A stretch of 63,506 nucleotides of DNA, counting the filler, from Octopus bimaculoides (Eukaryota), in NCBI RefSeq assembly GCF_001194135.2. It is 6 parts of 6 records of this genome, joined end to end, with 100 filler letters (N's around TTAATTAATTAA, not from the genome) between each part and the next. Parts side by side here need not be neighbours in the genome. Positions count along the whole stretch, not along the records: positions 59,274 to 62,365 come from NW_026319268.1; 5 more parts are not named here. The stretch is one strand, 5' to 3'. The notes beneath the pieces are model-generated. The model was not told the DNA's origin. It worked only from the letters and a program-made list of their open reading frames with translations, and did not search any database. Positions within the stretch are counted from its first letter, which is position 1, and each line of letters begins with the position of its first letter. Positions 9,401 to 62,466 of this stretch are shown here, piece after piece. Made by a program: the position numbers and the translations under genes.

Positions 9401-10290
9401 GAGGCCAGGCGTCGAGCTGGCAGAATCGTTAGCACGCTGGACGAAATGCTTAGCGGTATTTCGTCCGTCTTTATGTTCTGAGTTCAAATTCCGCCGAGGT
9501 CGACTTTGCCTTTCATCTTTCGGGGTCAATAAATTAAATACCAGTCAAGTATTGGGGTCGATGTAATCGACTATCCCTCTCCCCTCAAATTCCAGGCCTT
9601 GTGCCTATAGTAGAAGAGATTATTATTATTATTCAAAATAATCAACTGTTCAAACAAACTTCATTTTCATTAAAATCTGACACACCTTAGTTAAGGCTTA
9701 CTAAACAAGGGAGGTAACTCTTACTGTATTTCCAATAGATATCGTACCTTCTTGGTATATCTCTGAACTTTTATGTTTAGAATACATCGGAGAGAAAAAG
9801 GAATATTTTAGCACTCGTAACATTTATATTTATTTGGGTAAAGTCGATAATCCATTTTGTAGTTACACCTAATTTCACCCATGATAATATCGTGAGGCAG
9901 TGTATGAAGTTTGTGAATATTGTAAAGGTTAATGCAGGGATCGAAGTCTATTGGCGTTTTAGTTATTTGAGAACACACACACACGCACACACATATTTTT
10001 TTATTTGTTTCAGTCATTGGACTGCGACCATGCTGGGGCACTACTTTGAAGGGTTTACTTGAAAAATTGACCCTAGCGCTTATTTTAAGTCTGGTTTTTA
10101 TTCTATCGATAGTTCGCGGGGACGTAAACAAACCTTCAGTAGTTGTTAAGCGGTGAAATGAGAGGTGGGTTGGTTTTTGGAAACAAACACCCGCACACGT
10201 GTATATACACGATGGGCTTCCACATAATTTCCGTCTACCCAATTTACTCACGGACTGAACCCAAAACCAAGTTGTTGCAAAGCGTGCTTC

Positions 10291-50304: not shown

Positions 50305-52774
50305 TTATTATATAAATAAGGTTAATGTCTATTAAAGAGTTTAATGTAATAAATATATAGGTATTTGGTTGTCTTATCTGTAATTTTTAATTTTTAATTA
50401 TCCAGTGAAGTAATTGGTGGGTGTATATGTTGTATAATAATTTTAAAGTTATTATATAATAAGGCCAATTCCTGTAGAAGGATTTATTTTATTAAATAGA
50501 TAGGTACTCTTTTACTCTTTTACTTGTTTCAGTCATTTGACTGCGGCCATACTGGAGCACCGCCTTTTAGTCAAGCAAATCGACCCCAGGACTTATTCTT
50601 TGGAAGCCTAGTACTTATTCTATCGGTCTCTTGTGCTGAACCGCTAAGTTATGGGGACGCAAACACACCACCATCGGTTGTCAAGCGATGCTGGGGGAAC
50701 AAACACAGACACAAACATATACACACATATACATACATATATATACATATATATCCATATATATACACATATGGGCTTCTTTCAGTTTCCGTCTACCAAA
50801 TCCACTCACAAGGCTTTGGTCGGCCCGAGGCAATAGTAGAAGACACTTGCCCAAGGTGCCATGCAGTGGGAATGAACTAAGCATTATGTAGAATTATTAT
50901 CTGTAGTTATTATTCTTTAGTTATCTATTAGGCATAACAGAATTCTTACCTACTGTTTTTGTTCAGTAGATGTCCAGTAATGTCATCAATATTTGTACAT
51001 AAATATACTCATTTTTTAGGTCATGTTTTAGGTTTTCTTTTTTTTTATTATTCTTTTAGATAATTTTTCTATGTAGATTTCAAATTGTCAAAAAATATAG
51101 AATTAGTATGGTATTTTTTATCTTTTATTCTTATAAACTAAATTAGTTATTCAGTGACATCGCTCTTGGTTGAATGAATGAATGTCTAAAGTTAAATTTG
51201 GTTTGGCATTTCTTTTTGTTAGTGTTTTTAAACAGCTAAAATTTTTTCCAGATATTCAGTTAAAATTTCACCAATTTGGATTACCATTATAAATAATGTT
51301 GTATAGACATAAATTTTCATACATATTATTATTAATTTTAATAATATTATGTATATNNNNNNNNNNNNNNNNNNNNNNNNNNNNNNNNNNNNNNNNNNNN
51401 NNNNNNNNNNNNNNNNNNNNNNNNNNNNNNNNNNNNNNNNNNNNNNNNNNNNNNNNNNNNNNNNNNNNNNNNNNNNNNNNNNNNNNNNNNNNNNNNNNNN
51501 NNNNNNNNNNNNNNNNNNNNNNNNNNNNNNNNNNNNNNNNNNNNNNNNNNNNNNNNNNNNNNNNNNNNNNNNNNNNNNNNNNNNNNNNNNNNNNNNNNNN
51601 NNNNNNNNNNNNNNNNNNNNNNNNNNNNNNNNNNNNNNNNNNNNNNNNNNNNNNNNNNNNNNNNNNNNNNNNNNNNNNNNNNNNNNNNNNNNNNNNNNNN
51701 NNNNNNNNNNNNNNNNNNNNNNNNNNNNNNNNNNNNNNNNNNNNNNNNNNNNNNNNNNNNNNNNNNATATATGGGTGTGTGTGTGTGCATATATGTATAT
51801 GTTAATACAATTGAAACAATTGTTTGATTTTTAAGGTCTCATCTAAAATAAAGATATGATTTTCTTTGTATATTACTATAGATTGTGATTAATACTCTGA
51901 ATTTCTTAAAATTCTATGAAAGGATTGTTGGATTTACGTGCTGTACATGAAGATTTACCTGAGATTTGTATTCTACTTAGATTTACTTGTTGGAAATTTA
52001 ACCTTATTCCTTTATACTGAGTGCTTACTTGATACCTGCCAGGATTTTTTAATCCCATTTCTTCTTTTATATATATATCATCGTTTAATGCCCACCTTCC
52101 ATACTGGCATGGGGTGAATGGTTTGTCAGGAGCTTGCCAGGTAGAAGACTATCCCAGGCTACTATCTTTGGAGACATGAACTGGCCTCTCCTCAGTATAT
52201 ATTGAATATCTGCATGTGTCACTGTTCTAATAGTCCACTCCTACACTTGAAGTTCTTTAGCAAAAACTTTTATTTATTTACTGAGATCGATATTGAGAAT
52301 GTTTTGAACCTTTTGGACGAATTGCAGTGTCCTTATCGTGACTGAACATTCAGAATGTTCTTTTTAACACTGATACAGTTGAAACATTCCCACTGGAGGC
52401 TTCAAAGTCCATTTGAACTTTGTATACAAATGACCGTGCAAAATTTAGGAATCTCTAAGTTATTGTGTTCTGTACAAATGGCAACAATGACTACATAACT
52501 TTTCATTTCTTGTGTTAACATTTTATCTGCTATCAGGGATTTGAAAGAAATAACAATCTTTTAATTGTTTGAGGTGAGTAGTATACTAAAAATGAAGTAT
52601 CCTCAAATGCCTTTTACACCCAGTAAATATGTATATAAATATGTATGTATGTATGTATGTATGTGTGTATGTATGTATGTATGTATGTAAGGTTGCTCTT
52701 GGGTGCTACTGGTAACATTTAACCCAGTACACACGATAAGGTATAGATATTGGTCATTACATATTTCAGTTTAT

Positions 52775-55564: not shown

Positions 55565-56835
55565 TATATACGAGTAAAATTCATCTTCGTCTGCTGCTAT
55601 TCAACGGATCTATGATTCAAAGACTTGATGGCCTGACAACTCTCGTCTTTCTTCTTCCCACCATTGTTCTCTTCCTCTCTTATTCTTGTTGTCCAGGCTA
55701 CATTATCATTATCCCATGTACCCAATATTTCTCAAGCGGTAGGGTGTAATTTTAGAGAGATTTGGTAAGTTGAGTCACTCCATCTTACACAGGTGGAGGT
55801 TCTGCGACCTTCAGGCCGCCTGTAGCTTTTGAGTATCTAAGTGCGGCTCAGTCCTTTGGAATAAGCTTATAAGCTGGTGTGAATTTAGAAGTTTGAGGCT
55901 CTCCAGGAAGCCAGCTATTCTTGATCTTACTACCCTTTCAAACACTTTAATGATATGAGAGGTGAGTGAGATTGGGCGATAGTTAACTGCGAGGGATTTG
56001 TTTCCCTGTTCGAAAACCGGGATGACAGACTGAGATAAGAGCTCTTTCGGTTGGTCAGAGGGACTGCAAGTTGGTGTCTACATTCCTTCAGGAGACTAGC
56101 GGGGAATCTATCAGGGCACACAGCAGAATAGTATTTGATCTCATTTATTGCTGCTATGATGTCTGAAGCAGCAAAGGTTACGTCCACGATTATACGTTGG
56201 GAATCGACTTCGTTCACATCCCTTACGTCAGTATCAGTGGGATCACTAAAGACAGAGCAGTATTGTTTCTGAAGTACTTCTGCCATTTCTTTAGCATCGT
56301 GTTGGAGGTTGCCGTTATCATCGATCAATGGACCAATGGTTGAAACAGCGGTCCTATGTTTATTTGCATATGAATAGAACACGTTTGGGTTCTGTCTGAT
56401 ATTTTTTGATTACCTACTGTTCCTCTGCAGCTCTTTGATTTTCAATGGAGGTTTTCATGTTGGTCTGCAGATGAAGTTTTTCCAACTCCAGCCTTTTCAT
56501 TGTTGTTGAATATGGATGTTGTATGTGAGAGTATTTTTAATGGTTGATTTTTAAAAATTAAGTCCTTTGATGAGTGTTTTTTTCTCTCTCTAGGGAGCCT
56601 GTTTCTGTTTGTGTTAGTGGATTTCGTTGGAACGTGTTTTGAGCATGTATAGGTGACAATGTCCTCAAAGTGCTGCCATGTAATTTCTATGTCAGTGGCA
56701 CTGAGAGTGAAGGACCAATCGATAAAGAACAGATTCTTTCTGATTGCTCTCCAGTCCGCTTTGTGGAAGGTTATGTTGTCAAATAACTGCAGTGGAGTGG
56801 GATTGGCTGGTTTGGTTTTGATATGCCGGAAATCA
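55565..56835 (-). mobile_element. CR1/L2-like LINE ORF2 fragment
   Basis: FHKADW, NPNVFYSYANK..IGPL, AEVLQKQYCSVFS, PDRFPASLLKEC...LAVPL. Confidence 0.85.
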
Positions 56836-56836
56836 A

Positions 56837-56881
<45 letters not shown>

Positions 56882-57261
56882 TGAGTGTGTGTGTGTGTGT
56901 GTCAGTTTGAGTTAGAGGTAAAGCAACCATCTAAGGGATAATAAATATCCAATATACTGCTGGATGTATAACCACGTATTTATATCTAAGCGCTTACTAT
57001 TGCAGGGCAATTTGAATACTAGGTATGGGTGGGGGTAAAACAGAAATTTACCCAGGATTTATAAGGCAAATAAGAAAATGGAGAGGATAACCAATCGGCA
57101 AACATCAGCCTGTAAACATTCATTTATATCTATTTATTAATTGATTACAATCATATGTATAAGTAATCAAAATAAACAACTGAAATAAGAAAATAAACAA
57201 GTAAATAAATAGAAAAAATAAAAATAAATGAACGAGAATAAATGAGTGAACAAATACTAAA

Positions 57262-57396
57262 CTCTTACAGCTGTTTCTGCTATGGGGTTGCTAAGTTTTC
57301 CACATCACGCCAGTAATATACAGGGATTGTACAATGATTGAACAAACATTGGACAGGGGTTGGACAATGATTGAGCCCCAAAGCTTCATCAGAGAG
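57262..57396 (-). ncRNA. Type-I hammerhead ribozyme motif with long stem II loop
   Basis: Minus strand reads CTCT-CTGATGA-AGCTTTGGGG...(~90 nt)...CCCCATAGCA-GAAAC-AGCT-GTA-AGAG; stem I CTCT/AGAG; base of stem II mismatched. Confidence 0.55.
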
Positions 57397-58099
57397 ACCA
57401 TTATGTTAGGAATCTAACATGTGAGGAAATAAGGTAAAATAATAAAATAAAATAATAATATAATAGAAACAGTAAGGGATGGCAAAACGTCAATTCCAAG
57501 GTGATATCAATAAGCCATGAGATTATATCTTGTGGTAAAGATTAAAGAAAGTCACTTCCAGGAGTAATTTTCACAAGTTATGAGAGTTACATCGTATTTC
57601 AATTTTACTGGGGAAAAATAACGAGGATAAGACGTTGTAGAGTGAGTTTAATGGGATGGTCCATATCACAGGGGTCAAAAGTTAGAGGCTAACTGCTATG
57701 TAATAGAGCATCATAAAAGGAATTGACAAAGTTAACTTAATGTGAACTTGTTTGGAGAAATCAATACATAAGTATATCAATGAAAGAAAAATTGGGGTAA
57801 AACCTTAGCGCGATGTTATTGTTACTTATTAACAAAAACCTCATCCTAATACCCCTATGAATACTAGGGCGAGGCCAAAGTTAATCCTACAACTTAAGTG
57901 GTTCGCTAAAATTGAAAACAATGGCGTTGTTCAGGTCCGTTAAATCCATAAATAAAATACAAGATAAGTAAAAACAAAAACAAAAAAAATTTAAATACTT
58001 AAGGAATAAATTGTCTAAGGAGCCTTACTTAATGAATGGGCTTTGAATATTACTTACGATTATGGATATAGTATATTTTATGAATATATCTGAGATATA

Positions 58100-58374
58100 C
58101 AGGGTCCGCCATAAGTAACTATATATTTTCTTTTGCTTGTAACTTTGTTGATACTTATTCAATTTTTCTATTTCATATGTCATTTGAAAGCTGAAATCTT
58201 ATATTTTTATTTCTTCCCCCCACCCCCACCCTATTTCAGATATACTGTTATATCGATTATGTCCACCCGATTAACAAAAGAGCAAAAGATTGCGGTTTTG
58301 AAACAGAAAAATTAAATAAGTATCAACAAAGTTACAAGCAAAAGAAAATATATAGTTTCTTATGGCGGACCCTG
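58100..58374 (+). mobile_element. Tc1/mariner-type MITE / deletion derivative
   Basis: ~60-bp TIRs CAGGGTCCGCCATAAG(T/A)AACTATATATTTTC... with one mismatch, TA target duplication, and an internal transposase-start-like ATG (MSTRLTKEQKIAVLK). Confidence 0.8.
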
Positions 58375-59453
58375 TATATCAAATTAACAAGTAATTATCT
58401 GAACAAGAAAAATAAAGGACGAAGCAATTAGTGGAAAAATAAACACTGCTGGACTTTATTGGAGATAGGTAGCCGATTAAAATGCAGAGAGAAATTATGC
58501 AATAAAGTAAGATTTAGGAAATGTTATTCCGTTATGGATAGATCTAAGTTATAATTTCAAATTATAGAAGAACAAAGATGAAAATGAATGAATGAAAATA
58601 TTTTGAGACTTATAGACTACAATTGAAGCGGAGTGACTGTGTATTGCGTTTCAATGTTGGGGTGCAGAGAGATATTTAGACACATATAGTAAAGTTGAGG
58701 TTATTTTCAATTATAGAGAGAAACAGAAGGTATTAATGTTAGGATAGGGGTAGAGCTTAGAGAAGATAATGGACCTTACGTGGTATTATAATTGAATCAG
58801 ATTGTTAATATATAAAATTATAAGCTTATGGAATTAATTACAATGGGAGTTATTCTGGCTAAGTTGGATTCCTGTCCAATGCTTGTTCAACCATTGTACA
58901 ATCTCTGTATATTACTGGCGTGATGTGAAAAACCTTGGCAGATTGGGCAACCCCAATGTAGAAACAGCTGTAAGAGTTTAGTACTTGTTCACTCATTTAT
59001 TTATTTTTATTTATCTATTTATTTACTTGTTTATTTGCTTATTTCAGTTGTTTATTTTGATCACTTATACATATGATTATTGTCATCAATTAATAAATAG
59101 ATATAAATGAATGTTTACAGGCTGATGTTTGTCGATTGATTATCTTTCCCATTTTTTAAATTTTCCTTATATANNNNNNNNNNNNNNNNNNNNNNNNNNN
59201 NNNNNNNNNNNNNNNNNTTAATTAATTAANNNNNNNNNNNNNNNNNNNNNNNNNNNNNNNNNNNNNNNNNNNNATTTTCCAAGTGTCCCTTAAGACAAAT
59301 AATGTTTTACGACAAATAATTGCGTATCACACAAGTATAAATAGCCAAGGAGATGTACTTGTGCTCACTCTCAAAGTGAGAGAAGTCTCGTATGACCTGA
59401 GTAGATTTTTCAGAGCGAGCTTGTCAGTCAACAAGTCGTGAAAAGGCGTAATT

Positions 59454-60469
59454 ATGGAGACAGTGAACACAAATGAAACACCTTTCTTGAAAACTCTCGA
59501 ATTTTATGCAAAAATTAATAGTATTCTCAAATCAATGACCGATATATCATTGCTGAAATCAAACAAAGTTAAAGGTTTCTCTTTACAAGTTCTCTCGTTA
59601 CTATTCTATTCGTATTTACTTCTAAATCCTATTCGGCACATTGTTTCCTTAGTAAAAATGGGAAATATGGAAAGCGATGTATTGTTTCTATATATTTACG
59701 TAATATTTTTCCGCATATTTCAATCTTTAACTCTATTGATAAAACTGTTCAAAAAATCTAGACACAAGGAGCTAATTGAAAAGTTTGCCGAACTTAAAAC
59801 TGAACATGAAGAAAATATCTGGTATAACAAACCTATAATATATAAGTCAGTGTATATATTAATATGTCTGGTTATTATTGGGAGCATAACTATGGACCTT
59901 GTAATACCGCTGTTGAGTACTGATTTGTTGACGTATTTCAAATATCCTGCACCCGCTGATTATAAATATATCATCCCAATTTTAGCACTGCAGGTTGTAT
60001 TTAATTCAATGTCAGCTCTAGCCATATTAAGTGATGTGTACATAAATCTCCTAATCACAGCCACTCTGATGCATCACTTTAACAAAGTGGCGAATGAAGC
60101 TCAAAGTTACGTAACGGAGAAGCAATCAACTAAGTCGGATATTATTAAGAATCATAGAGAGATTACAGACATATGTAACACTCNNNNNNNNNNTCGGATA
60201 TTATTAAGAATCATAGAGAGATTACAGACATATGTAACACTCATGATACTCTTAGTTCAATACTGAGTCTAGTAAATCATTCCTTGCAGTTTATTTCAGG
60301 GTGTACCGTGTTCGGTAGTGTCATCAGCTGCTGTATCCTTACTTACGGACTAATAAATGATTCTCTCAAAAATGACATGTATACAAACATTTATGCCACT
60401 GTACTGGTTTTGGTATCTGTGCTTTCTTGGATTGTACTATTTTGGTGCGGAATTCTTTTAAACAAATCG
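59454..60469 (+). CDS. Gustatory-receptor-like (7tm_7 / 7TMIC) chemoreceptor, long first exon encoding TM1-TM6 (319 codons after removing an assembly duplication)
   Basis: ATG 59454 has an in-frame stop upstream. Six hydrophobic segments. Removing the duplicated 49 bp plus 10 N (60184-60242) gives one frame ...KNHREITDICNTHDTLSSILSLVNHSLQFISGCTVFGSVISCCILTYGL...SWIVLFWCGILLNKS ending at a phase-0 GTAAGT donor (60470). TM7 exon not found. Confidence 0.7.
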
Positions 60470-61105
60470 GTAAGTTGTACAAATTTTTTTAATAACTCTA
60501 GGTTATCTAATCTACATCACATCCGTATTGCTATTGTAGTTATAACATATAAGCGTATTGATGAAGTAAAACGANNNNNNNNNNNNNNNNNNNNNNNNNN
60601 NNNNNNNNNNNNNNNNNNNNNNNNNNNNNNNNNNNNNNNNNNNNNNNNNNNNNNNNNNNNNNNNNNNNNNNNNNNNNNNNNNNNNNNNNNNNNNNNNNNN
60701 NNNNNNNNNNNNNNNNNNNNNNNNNNNNNNNNNNNNNNNNNNNNNNNNNNNNNNNNNNNNNNNNNNNNNNNNNNNNNNNNNNNNNNNNNNNNNNNNNNNN
60801 NNNNNNNNNNNNNNNNNNNNNNNNNNNNNNNNNNNNNNNNNNNNNNNNNNNNNNNNNNNNNNNNNNNNNNNNNNNNNNNNTCTCTCTCTCTCTCTCTCCC
60901 TGAATTGGTCACATTTGCTCGTCATATGTCTGGGGTCGAGAAATCAATGCGCACGGAAATGGAGGCCACTAGACTGATGTGATGTTAAATTCTCTTAGCA
61001 AATCTGCTCTGTTAATTGTAGCGTATAAGACAGATGAAATAGATCCAAATTATAAGAAGTAATAGAAACTGCTGCTGGTATCATCCAAACTTCAATTTTG
61101 TGTCA

Positions 61106-62035
61106 TACAAGAGGCAGTCAAAAGTTATCCACACTTTCGCTAAAACTTGCTTTTGTTTGGCTGAACTGCTTTCAGCGCTCTCGTGGCACTTTTTTGGCTA
61201 CGTAACCGTGATTTGACCCTGTTCTCTCTAGTCTTTATTCTCTACTGGAAAGTGAGCACCAAGGAAGGATATTGATCACAGAACTGATTTCTCTGGTTTC
61301 CAGGTGTGTCAGAGGCTGAAATTTATCATAGGTTTCCAGTAGAAGTGTGTGTGACTGGATCGAGAATTCTCAAATTGGACGGACAAGCCCGAAGCACCTA
61401 GAGGGAGAAGGACGGCCACAGCCTCTGCTATTGATGAGAAAATTCAACAAGCTCGAAAGATGGTTCAGGTGAACCGTCGAATGACCATCCATGAGGGGCA
61501 TGTTCTCTGCAAATTAATTATGCTTCTGCTTCTAAAATCTTCCACGACAGGCTTTGATTCCGTACAATCTATACGAGATGAATGTCAAAAGAGCTCACTG
61601 AAGCGCATATGTACAATCGGGCGGCGGTGTGACATCGTTCACTCGACCGCTACGGCGACGAAGGCGAAGCGCTTTTAGAGAGAATAGTTACAGGATTTGA
61701 GACATGGGTCCATCACTTTAAACCAGAATCCAAAAGGCAGAGTATGGAATGGTAAAACCTGGAACCTCTGAGGAAAAAGAAATTCAAGCCTCAACACTCC
61801 GCAAAAAAAGTGACACTGACTGTTTTTCGAAACATAGAAAGACTTGTACTGCAATATGACCTGGGAAAAGGGTCTACAGTCACCAGTGTAAGCTACAGTA
61901 AAATGCTGACCAACAAACTAAAACCAACTATTCGCACGAAACGCCAAGGTTTACTGTCAAATCAAGTGCTATTGTTGCACAACAATACATGTCTACATAT
62001 GGATGTCCATACCATAAAAAACTGGGGCTTTGGGT
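61106..62035 (+). mobile_element. mariner transposon, decayed
   Basis: TIR-like start TACAAGAGGCAGTCAAAAG; ETWVHHFKPESKRQSMEW; VLLLHNN motif. Confidence 0.85.
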
Positions 62036-62466
62036 AACCAGAACAACCTGAACTCGAAAACACTGCACTGACGACCGAGGTTTTTTCAACACAGCAACGC
62101 ATGAAAAAAATAATAATAATAAACCTATCACTTACGCAACTGAATCAATTCTGACTGAGCAAATTATACGACTAGATAAATATGGAGTCATTGTTGGCGT
62201 TGTGGTAAACACATTGACGTTTCTGTATCATTGATATTCTGATTGTTGTTGACTTCGAAGAAAGTGATGTGTTTTAATGAATAGACAAAACATTAGCAAG
62301 CATCCAAACATGCACACATGTAAGCATAATATTTATTATGCCTACATGTGTGTGTGTGTGTGTGTNNNNNNNNNNNNNNNNNNNNNNNNNNNNNNNNNNN
62401 NNNNNNNNNTTAATTAATTAANNNNNNNNNNNNNNNNNNNNNNNNNNNNNNNNNNNNNNNNNNNNA

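What the first reader, a model, noticed from the sequence alone, without database searches (positions are those of the whole stretch)
59454..60469. Hidden gustatory-receptor-like (7TMIC) gene masked by an assembly duplication
Seen: a 49-bp segment (60135-60183) is repeated after a 10-N gap (60194-60242). Collapsing it fuses two ORFs into one 957-nt exon with six hydrophobic helices, an H-x-x-L...V-N motif before TM5 and a phase-0 GTAAGT donor just after TM6. Knowledge: insect GRs and animal GRLs have this topology with phase-0 introns near the C-terminus. Inference: an intact mollusc/cephalopod GRL that annotation would split or discard. I am not aware of functional characterisation of GRLs in cephalopods, whose described chemotactile receptors derive from nicotinic receptors instead.
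Basis: partly seen in the sequence, partly recalled or inferred. Interest (0 to 1): 0.78.

Follow-up and report, generated by a model that had tools for sequence, protein, structure and literature searches.

The report
Octopus taste-receptor-like exon split by assembly gap
An intact 319-codon octopus exon encoding the first six membrane helices of an insect-type taste-receptor-like ion channel is hidden by an assembly gap, and in related octopus genomes such exons sit in tandem arrays sharing one distant set of small exons for the seventh, pore-lining helix.

Summary
An exact 49-bp copy flanks the 10-N gap. Removing the gap and one copy gives one open 957-nt exon (ATG 59454, GTAAGT donor at 60470). 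Five homologous octopod loci carry the 49-mer once, and both gap flanks map onto overlapping coordinates in them, so the duplication is almost certainly an unmerged contig overlap.

The product belongs to the GR/GRL (7TMIC) family. Pfam 7tm_7 scores E=4.7e-5 for this TM7-less exon, and full-length octopus homologues pass Pfam's threshold. An AlphaFold model of a 70%-identical homologue matches only insect GR/OR/Orco structures among its top 15 PDB hits.

The main refinement is that this is probably not a compact stand-alone gene. In Octopus sinensis and O. bimaculoides, 5–8 such large exons lie in tandem. Each has its own ATG and a phase-0 donor, and they lie upstream of three shared small exons encoding TM7 (TYILVVIQT). 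This is the layout of Drosophila Gr39a. The window exon is most like the first exon of such an array, whose shared exons lie 45–80 kb downstream.

No TM7 exon is in the readable piece, and the 306-N gap is unlikely to hold one. Expression and function are untested.

The parts
59336..59343 (+). TATA-like element TATAAATA, 111 nt upstream of the ATG; candidate private promoter of this exon (inferred)
   Evidence: The block cacacaagtataaata[g/a]ccaag is conserved upstream of the orthologous first variable exon of O. sinensis. The upstream region aligns at ~80% to O. bimaculoides and L001 back to about -145. Promoter activity is not tested.
59439..59441 (+). In-frame TGA four codons before the start codon, so the exon opens its own reading frame
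59454..60183 (+). Large exon, part left of the gap: ATG, cytoplasmic N-terminus, TM1-TM4 and most of intracellular loop 2 (codons 1-243 and the first base of codon 244)
60184..60242 (.). Assembly artefact: the N10 placeholder (60184-60193) plus a second copy of the 49-mer (60194-60242); to be removed
   Evidence: Exact 49/49 repeat. Single copy in L001, L002, L006 and L007 and in all protein homologues. Exact end/start duplicates of 11-32 nt flank 6 of the 17 gaps in the O. bimaculoides locus L007, so this artefact type is common in that style of assembly.
60243..60469 (+). Large exon, part right of the gap: HDxL..VN motif, TM5 (60284-60340), TM6 (60401-60457), ending ...LLNKS
60470..60475 (+). 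Phase-0 splice donor GTAAGT
   Evidence: The same position carries GT[AG]AG[TC] (GTATGT in L006 v1) in 13 of 13 paralogous exons of O. sinensis. It reads as '..|VS..' read-through in the metagenomic/Logan ORFs of the family.
60476..62365 (+). Start of the long intron: conserved intron sequence to ~60571, a 306-N gap (60575-60880), (TC)n at 60881-60898, and a decayed mariner-type transposase at ~61300-62040. No TM7 or constant exon is present.

Best explanation
The ORF is an intact 'variable' 5' exon of an octopod gustatory-receptor-like (GRL, 7TMIC superfamily, Pfam 7tm_7) locus. It has been cut in two by an assembler that placed N10 between two contigs overlapping by 49 bp. The exon has its own start codon and probably its own promoter. 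It encodes the cytoplasmic N-terminus and TM1-TM6, the part that forms the ligand pocket in insect GR/OR structures. It ends in a phase-0 donor. By analogy with its closest relatives, it is spliced to three small shared exons far downstream. These are C1 (~23 aa, with an internal alternative acceptor), C2 (30 aa) and C3 (18 aa, TM7 with T-Y-x5-Q). They supply the pore-lining helix and the subunit interface common to all isoforms of the locus. The expected product is a subunit of a tetrameric ligand-gated cation channel of ~375-390 aa. Shown here: the exon's integrity after collapse, family membership and fold of the homologues, and the array-plus-constant-exon architecture in two octopus genomes. 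Inferred: that this window's exon belongs to such an array, that it is transcribed from its own promoter, and that the product is a chemoreceptor channel.
For: Collapse gives a 957-nt open exon. Five homologous DNA loci and all protein homologues have the 49-mer once. Pfam 7tm_7 gives E=4.7e-5 and 23.3 bits for the exon alone. Full-length relatives pass the 26.6-bit threshold: P0005 31.6, P0028 33.8, P0027 30.3, P0018 27.4. The AF2 model of P0002 (70% identical; pLDDT 70.9, pTM 0.67) has as its top 15 PDB matches only Gr64a, Orco, OR28, OR5-Orco, BmGr9, Gr43a and MhOR5, at prob 0.99-1.0 and TM 0.38-0.51. The next hits drop to ABC transporters at TM <0.27. Hydropathy gives six TMs, a 36-residue K/R-rich TM2-3 loop and a 51-residue TM4-5 loop, which fits an N-in topology with long inner loops. 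In O. sinensis, L006 has 8 tandem large exons and L005 has 5. Each has its own ATG, is 936-993 nt long and ends in a phase-0 donor, and 12 of 13 are intact. They are followed by C1, C2 and C3 with AG/GT borders, all in phase 0. O. bimaculoides has 5 large exons plus C1-C3. RefSeq isoforms join different large exons to an identical C-terminus: P0003/P0008 versus P0027/P0018, and P0028 versus P0029 with 100% identity over the last 70 aa. The window aligns at 80% nt identity to the first large exon of both species, including ~145 nt upstream and ~77 nt of intron. dN/dS is 0.42-0.45 against three relatives.
Against: Only 1.9 kb downstream of the exon is available, 306 nt of it unread, so membership of an array and the existence of constant exons for this copy are not shown. 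No read, transcript or expression data could be examined. The RefSeq isoforms are computational models. The exon alone scores below Pfam's gathering threshold. Foldseek E-values are 2e-3 or worse, and the model's TM7 region has low confidence (pLDDT <50). The window is only ~70% identical in protein to any annotated octopus gene, so it may be a paralogue with a different arrangement.
Confidence: 0.75

Rival explanations
1. A stand-alone GRL gene: this large exon has its own private small exons with TM7 just beyond the piece or inside the 306-N gap, and it is not part of a multi-exon array.
For: Nothing in the piece shows a second large exon. The window is a fairly divergent (~70%) relative of the annotated loci, so its arrangement could differ.
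Against: No C1, C2 or C3 match exists anywhere in the readable 1.6 kb downstream. Contig L001 is colinear with the window's intron up to the gap and then runs ~125 nt to a (TC)n repeat without any exon. The window resumes with (TC)n after the gap. In both reference species the orthologous exon lies 45-80 kb from the constant exons, with other large exons in between. All three O. sinensis loci examined use shared C-terminal exons.
Confidence: 0.15
2. The 49-bp tandem duplication is real, so the exon is frameshifted and is a recently dead pseudo-exon.
For: Pseudo-exons do occur in these arrays: L006 v7 has an in-frame stop. Reads could not be inspected.
Against: The two copies are 100% identical and are separated exactly by a 10-N placeholder, the signature of unmerged overlapping contig ends. 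The same kind of end/start duplicate flanks 6 of 17 gaps in an octopus assembly of this style. The 76 codons after the junction are open in the collapsed frame and conserved.
Confidence: 0.07
3. An unrelated multi-pass membrane protein that only resembles GRs by hydrophobic composition.
For: The exon's Pfam score is below threshold. The sequence profile finds no PDB GR/OR chain.
Against: Full-length relatives pass the Pfam threshold over profile positions 33-367 of 370. The fold search returns only GR/OR/Orco at the top. The relatives' last exon carries T-Y-x5-Q, and there are three phase-0 introns at the 3' end.
Confidence: 0.03

Closest known systems
Drosophila Gr39a (also Gr28b, Gr23a): alternatively spliced gustatory receptor loci
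   Same: [quoted passage not shown] The octopus loci L005, L006 and L007 have this layout, including the count of three small exons and occasional pseudo-exons.
   Different: The phylum differs, and structure-based sequence identity to insect GRs is 10-14%. The octopus arrays have more large exons (5-8) spread over 40-90 kb rather than a few kb. The TM7 motif ends Q-T rather than Q-F. Isoform use is known only from RefSeq models. For the window itself only one large exon is visible.
Animal GR-like (GRL) proteins outside insects (Robertson 2015, Saina 2015, Eyun 2017, Benton 2020)
   Same: [quoted passage not shown] These are the criteria quoted in PMC7746228. Molluscan GRLs are already reported, for example in Aplysia.
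   Different: No cephalopod GRL is described in the papers I could search. An exhaustive HMMER profile search found only 16 representative clusters at E<1e-3. Every hit that carries a name in the word-indexed searches is from Octopus.
RefSeq LOC106880719 (O. bimaculoides, XP_052825891/2) and LOC118764607 (O. sinensis, XP_036361417/8)
   Same: Closest proteins, at 70% and 67% identity over all 319 residues. The window matches their first large exon, with conserved upstream and intron flanks.
   Different: At ~80% nt identity the window is not the same locus of the same assembly, so it is either an orthologue in another octopod or a paralogue. The RefSeq entries are named 'uncharacterized protein'.
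Clustered protocadherins / UGT1A (variable first exons with own promoters plus constant exons)
   Same: The gene logic is the same: a tandem array of long variable first exons, each with its own start, spliced to shared 3' exons.
   Different: These are unrelated proteins. Promoter choice is not shown here, so this is an analogy only, taken from general knowledge.
Octopus chemotactile receptors (CRs, nicotinic-receptor-derived)
   Same: They are candidate ionotropic chemoreceptors expanded in octopus (PMC11526382).
   Different: CRs are pentameric Cys-loop channels, an unrelated fold. They have functional and structural data, whereas this family has none.

Membership tests
GR/GRL, 7TMIC superfamily (Pfam PF08395 7tm_7) | Significant match to the 7tm_7 profile at or above Pfam's gathering score (26.6 bits) | tested here: inconclusive
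   The window exon alone scores 23.3 bits, E=4.7e-5, over profile positions 68-287, and it lacks the TM7 part. Full-length homologues pass: P0005 31.6, P0028 33.8, P0027 30.3, P0018 27.4.
GR/GRL, 7TMIC superfamily (Pfam PF08395 7tm_7) | [quoted passage not shown] | tested here: met
   There are six hydrophobic helices. The odd-numbered loops are 17, 21 and 20 aa. The even-numbered loops are 36 aa (9 K/R) and 51 aa. The helices also appear in the AF2 model of P0002.
GR/GRL, 7TMIC superfamily (Pfam PF08395 7tm_7) | Seventh TM helix with the T-Y-h5-Q-F motif | not testable with these tools
   TM7 is absent from the piece. In the relatives the last exon reads MIGSFITYILVVIQTKSL or LIGSIITYSIVAYQTRS. 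T, Y and Q are kept and F is replaced by T.
GR/GRL, 7TMIC superfamily (Pfam PF08395 7tm_7) | Conserved phase-0 introns near the 3' end, the last one just before TM7 | tested here: met
   The window has a phase-0 GTAAGT after TM6. In L005, L006 and L007 the relatives have three phase-0 introns: large exon|C1, C1|C2 and C2|C3, with C3 starting 6 codons before T-Y.
GR/GRL, 7TMIC superfamily (Pfam PF08395 7tm_7) | Orco/GR fold | tested here: met
   This was tested on the model of P0002, not on the window protein. The top 15 PDB hits are all insect GR/OR/Orco, at prob 0.99-1.0 and TM 0.38-0.51. E-values are only 2e-3 to 0.14.
GR/GRL, 7TMIC superfamily (Pfam PF08395 7tm_7) | Forms a tetrameric ligand-gated cation channel | not testable with these tools
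   This needs expression and electrophysiology or cryo-EM.
Gr39a-type locus (alternative large 5' exons plus shared small 3' exons) | Large exon encoding TM1-6 with its own ATG and 5' splice site | tested here: met
Gr39a-type locus (alternative large 5' exons plus shared small 3' exons) | Two or more such exons in tandem upstream of one set of small exons encoding TM7 | not testable with these tools
   The piece ends 1.9 kb after the exon. The feature is met in the related loci L005 (5), L006 (8) and L007 (5).
Gr39a-type locus (alternative large 5' exons plus shared small 3' exons) | Transcripts that join different large exons to the same small exons | tested here: inconclusive
   Only RefSeq predicted isoforms are available: LOC118764607 X1-X4 and LOC118764605 X1/X2, with identical C-termini. 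No RNA reads were examined.

The most novel reading that the evidence does not exclude
Octopods carry several protocadherin-like arrays of 7TMIC 'variable' exons that share pore-encoding constant exons. At least 14 intact large exons in three O. sinensis loci were read or inferred here. The layout is either inherited from the protostome ancestor shared with insect Gr39a/Gr28b or reinvented. These arrays may supply a second, so far unstudied ionotropic chemoreceptor repertoire beside the nicotinic-derived chemotactile receptors, possibly with one exon chosen per sensory cell.
Probability: 0.3. Interest if true: 0.75.

Novelty: new member of a known kind. Interest (0 to 1): 0.5.

Why it matters
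Cephalopod contact chemosensation is currently explained by nicotinic-receptor-derived CRs. The insect-type 7TMIC family is barely mentioned for cephalopods, and I found no paper on it. This exon shows that such genes exist, are under purifying selection, and can be lost from annotation through a trivial assembly artefact. The array architecture seen in the relatives gives a concrete, testable gene model: variable ligand-binding half, constant pore half. It also gives a direct comparison with insect Gr39a/Gr28b for asking whether this gene logic is ancestral. On the practical side, gap-flanking duplicates in this kind of assembly should be collapsed before gene prediction.

Tried and rejected
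1. TM7 in the piece: tblastn with the 57-aa C-terminus and with C1, C2 and C3 separately gave only noise (best E 0.5-2.5).
2. First AF2 run on a 5-sequence alignment gave pLDDT 40.8 and was unusable. It was replaced by a 15-sequence alignment.
3. A sequence profile against PDB gave only ferritin at E~1, so there is no sequence-level link to solved GR/OR chains.
4. Read-through of the donor as coding: the 14 residues VHSIT.SIH.MQFQ in isoform X1 looked like intron read-through of exon 1. Mapping shows they are the 5' part of shared exon C1, used through an upstream acceptor. The window has no in-frame alternative donor.
5. Identifying the source species: the Logan run accessions gave no relevant paper. 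The window is ~80% nt identical to O. bimaculoides, O. sinensis and contig L001 alike, so the species is unresolved. The gap style resembles the O. bimaculoides assembly.
6. Looking for relatives outside octopus: two profile searches of the 5.8-billion-protein set and one exhaustive HMMER search returned only octopus or unnamed contigs.
7. Exact look-up of P0002 and P0003 found no genomic record. The longer isoforms P0005 and P0008 did. LOC118764605 was too long to fetch.

Full report
**Observation.** The piece (59274-62365) contains one direct repeat. The 49-mer TCGGATATTATTAAGAATCATAGAGAGATTACAGACATATGTAACACTC occurs at 60135-60183 and again, 100% identical, at 60194-60242, with N10 in between.
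- As assembled, the ATG at 59454 opens a 270-codon frame that runs into the Ns and dies. A second ORF starts at 60284.
- Joining 59454-60183 to 60243-60469 gives 957 nt, 319 codons, with no stop. It is followed by GTAAGT at 60470, so the intron is phase 0.
- Keeping both copies shifts the frame and produces stops at once.
- A TGA lies four codons before the ATG.

**Gap test.** I tested continuity across the gap with related sequences, because reads are not available.
- Four proteins found by search align to the collapsed product end to end at 62-71% identity. They are two RefSeq octopus proteins and two ORFs from Logan contigs. None has an indel at the junction, and all read ...(S)D.I..H.EITDICN(T/A)HD.L... 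once.
- At the DNA level the left flank of the gap ends at L001:1139 and the right flank begins at L001:1092. The corresponding figures are 10725/10689 on the O. sinensis locus L006 and 10728/10682 on the O. bimaculoides locus L007.
- The two flanks are therefore overlapping ends of one single-copy sequence.
- In L007, an assembly with the same mixture of 10-N and variable-length gaps, 6 of 17 gaps are flanked by exact end/start duplicates of 11-32 nt. This is a recurrent artefact of that kind of assembly.
- A real tandem duplication cannot be excluded without reads. I rate it at about 7%.

**What the exon encodes.**
- Hydropathy gives six hydrophobic helices, at residues ~41-60, 78-96, 133-151, 173-206, 258-276 and 297-315. 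The odd loops are short (17-21 aa). The TM2-3 loop (36 aa, 9 K/R) and the TM4-5 loop (51 aa) are longer, which is the N-in pattern of GR/OR proteins (criteria as quoted in PMC7746228).
- Pfam 7tm_7 is the only meaningful family hit, at E=4.7e-5 and 23.3 bits. This is under the 26.6-bit threshold, as expected for a protein lacking the best-conserved TM7.
- Full-length relatives pass the threshold: P0005 31.6 bits over profile positions 33-367 of 370, P0028 33.8, P0027 30.3, P0018 27.4.
- An AlphaFold2 model of P0002 (70% identical to the window product) built on 5 sequences was useless, with pLDDT 40.8. With 15 family members it reached pLDDT 70.9 and pTM 0.67, but the C-terminal 45 residues stayed poor.
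- In Foldseek against the PDB, the first 15 hits are exclusively insect Gr64a, Orco, OR28, OR5-Orco, BmGr9, Gr43a and MhOR5. They have probability 0.99-1.0 and TM 0.38-0.51. After them the list falls to ABC transporters with TM <0.27. The E-values are modest, 2e-3 to 0.14.
- dN/dS against three relatives is 0.42-0.45 at dS 0.38-0.54. That is purifying selection of the relaxed kind usual for chemoreceptors.

**Where TM7 is.**
- In the RefSeq proteins the sequence after ...LN(R/K)S continues with (VHSIT.SIH.MQFQ)DIK.EV.AK ILVFLNRLTTESHGIDVGGCFVITPSSTLT M.GSFITYILVVIQTKSL.
- Nothing like this is in the readable part of the piece, on either strand.
- The Logan contig L001 is colinear with the window's intron up to the 306-N gap. 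It then runs ~125 nt, without any exon, into a (TC)n repeat. The window resumes after its gap with (TC)n.
- The gap therefore most likely hides intron and microsatellite, not an exon.

**Architecture in the relatives.** This is the main new point.
- RefSeq isoforms of one O. sinensis gene (LOC118764607 X1-X4) have different N-terminal 6-TM parts but the same C-terminus. LOC118764605 X1 and X2 are 44% identical overall but 100% identical over the last 70 residues.
- I fetched the loci and mapped the window product on them.
- L006 (O. sinensis CM016866.1, 83.16-83.27 Mb) carries eight full-length matches in tandem on one strand, at 10001, 25443, 28332, 47244, 55765, 67025, 72456 and 85902. L005 (82.74-82.80 Mb) carries five, plus the start of another array 10 kb past its last exon.
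- Each match is an ORF with its own ATG shortly after an in-frame stop. Each is 936-993 nt long and ends in a phase-0 donor, nearly always GT[AG]AGT. Twelve of the 13 are intact, and L006 v7 has one stop.
- Downstream of each array lie three small exons with AG/GT borders, all in phase 0.
  - C1 spans L006 91120-91188. It has an internal acceptor 42 nt in, which explains the long and short RefSeq isoforms.
  - C2 is 30 codons.
  - C3 is 18 codons plus the stop, and begins six codons before T-Y-I-L-V-V-I-Q.
- O. bimaculoides L007 has five large exons and C1-C3, in a locus that is 34% N.
- The unnamed ORFs found by the exhaustive HMMER search nearly all end '...N.(S/A)|VS...'. That is read-through of the same GTNAGY donor.

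**Meaning for the window.**
- The window exon is closest to the first large exon of L006 and L007: 67-70% protein identity and 80% nt identity. The alignment extends ~145 nt upstream of the ATG and ~77 nt into the intron. It is ~40% identical to the other large exons.
- A TATAAATA at 59336-59343 sits in a block that is also conserved upstream of O. sinensis v1.
- In the two reference species the next large exon is 5.7-14.5 kb away, and C1 is 45-80 kb away.
- I therefore conclude, with about 0.75 confidence, that the window holds an intact variable first exon of such a locus. Its TM7 is supplied by shared exons well outside the piece.
- A compact stand-alone gene remains possible (0.15).

**Mechanism (inferred from the family).**
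- In solved insect GR/OR channels, each subunit's ligand pocket is built from the extracellular halves of TM1-6. TM7 lines the central pore of a tetramer and forms most of the inter-subunit contacts. This is general knowledge, reviewed in PMC12635824.
- A locus with many TM1-6 exons and one TM7 module would thus produce channels with different ligand pockets and an identical pore and assembly interface, able in principle to co-assemble.
- Drosophila Gr39a has four large exons, each with six TM domains and its own ATG and donor. They are followed by three small exons encoding TM7 and the C-terminus, and splicing is mutually exclusive (PMC2204066). The octopus layout is the same, down to the three small exons.

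**Comparison and novelty.**
- GRLs are known from molluscs such as Aplysia. The octopus proteins exist in RefSeq as 'uncharacterized' with a 7tm_7 domain. The kind is therefore known.
- I found no paper that describes cephalopod GRLs or their array structure. The literature on octopus chemotactile sensing concerns nicotinic-derived CRs.
- Searches of 1.8 and 5.8 billion proteins returned only 16 representative clusters. Every named hit is from Octopus. The subfamily is therefore narrow or too divergent for HMMER to link to other GRLs.

**Limits.**
- The source species is unresolved.
- No reads or RNA data were examined.
- The structure model is of a homologue and is weak at TM7.
- Promoter use and isoform choice are inferred.

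Noticed in passing
window 61300-62040 (+): Decayed mariner-type transposase inside the intron, with several stops and frameshifts. Pfam Transposase_1 (PF01359) scores 28 bits, E=2e-6, on the stretch reading ...WVHHFKPESKRQSMEW.... GC content rises to 0.42-0.49 here, against ~0.33 in the exon.
   Followed up: partly
window 60881-60898 and L001 1551-1567: A (TC)n microsatellite sits right after the 306-N gap. A (TC)n also sits at the corresponding place in the intron of the homologous contig L001. The repeat probably caused the assembly gap.
   Followed up: partly
window 62305-62365: A near-palindrome (27-nt arms, 85% complementary) runs into a (TG)n tract at the end of the piece.
   Followed up: no
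L007 50545-52809 (-) versus 56117-59271 (+): The O. bimaculoides locus has a second, inverted copy of all three constant exons (C1 and C2 100%, C3 94% identical in protein) about 3 kb upstream of the forward set. A 10-N gap lies next to it at 52337-52346. It could be a real inverted duplication or an assembly artefact.
   Followed up: no
L006 91120-91188: Constant exon C1 has two acceptors 42 nt apart. The long form adds VHSITRSIHYMQFQ. The long isoform scores higher against Pfam 7tm_7 than the short one in O. bimaculoides (P0005 31.6 versus P0002 25.1 bits). The equivalent segment is present in both isoforms of LOC118764605.
   Followed up: partly
L006 72465-73418: Variable exon v7 of O. sinensis LOC118764607 has one in-frame stop (..LGNY*FKI..), so it is a likely pseudo-exon. 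Exons v3-v6 are very recent duplicates of each other.
   Followed up: partly
L005 59368-59583: Another large-exon start lies 10 kb past the last constant exon of LOC118764608, suggesting a further array immediately downstream. L005 and L006 are ~0.4 Mb apart on the same chromosome, in opposite orientation.
   Followed up: no
protein P0022 (360 aa): One family hit is a chimera. An unrelated N-terminal ~150 residues are followed by pieces of two different large exons in scrambled order. It is probably a mis-called ORF over a rearranged or transposon-disrupted copy.
   Followed up: no
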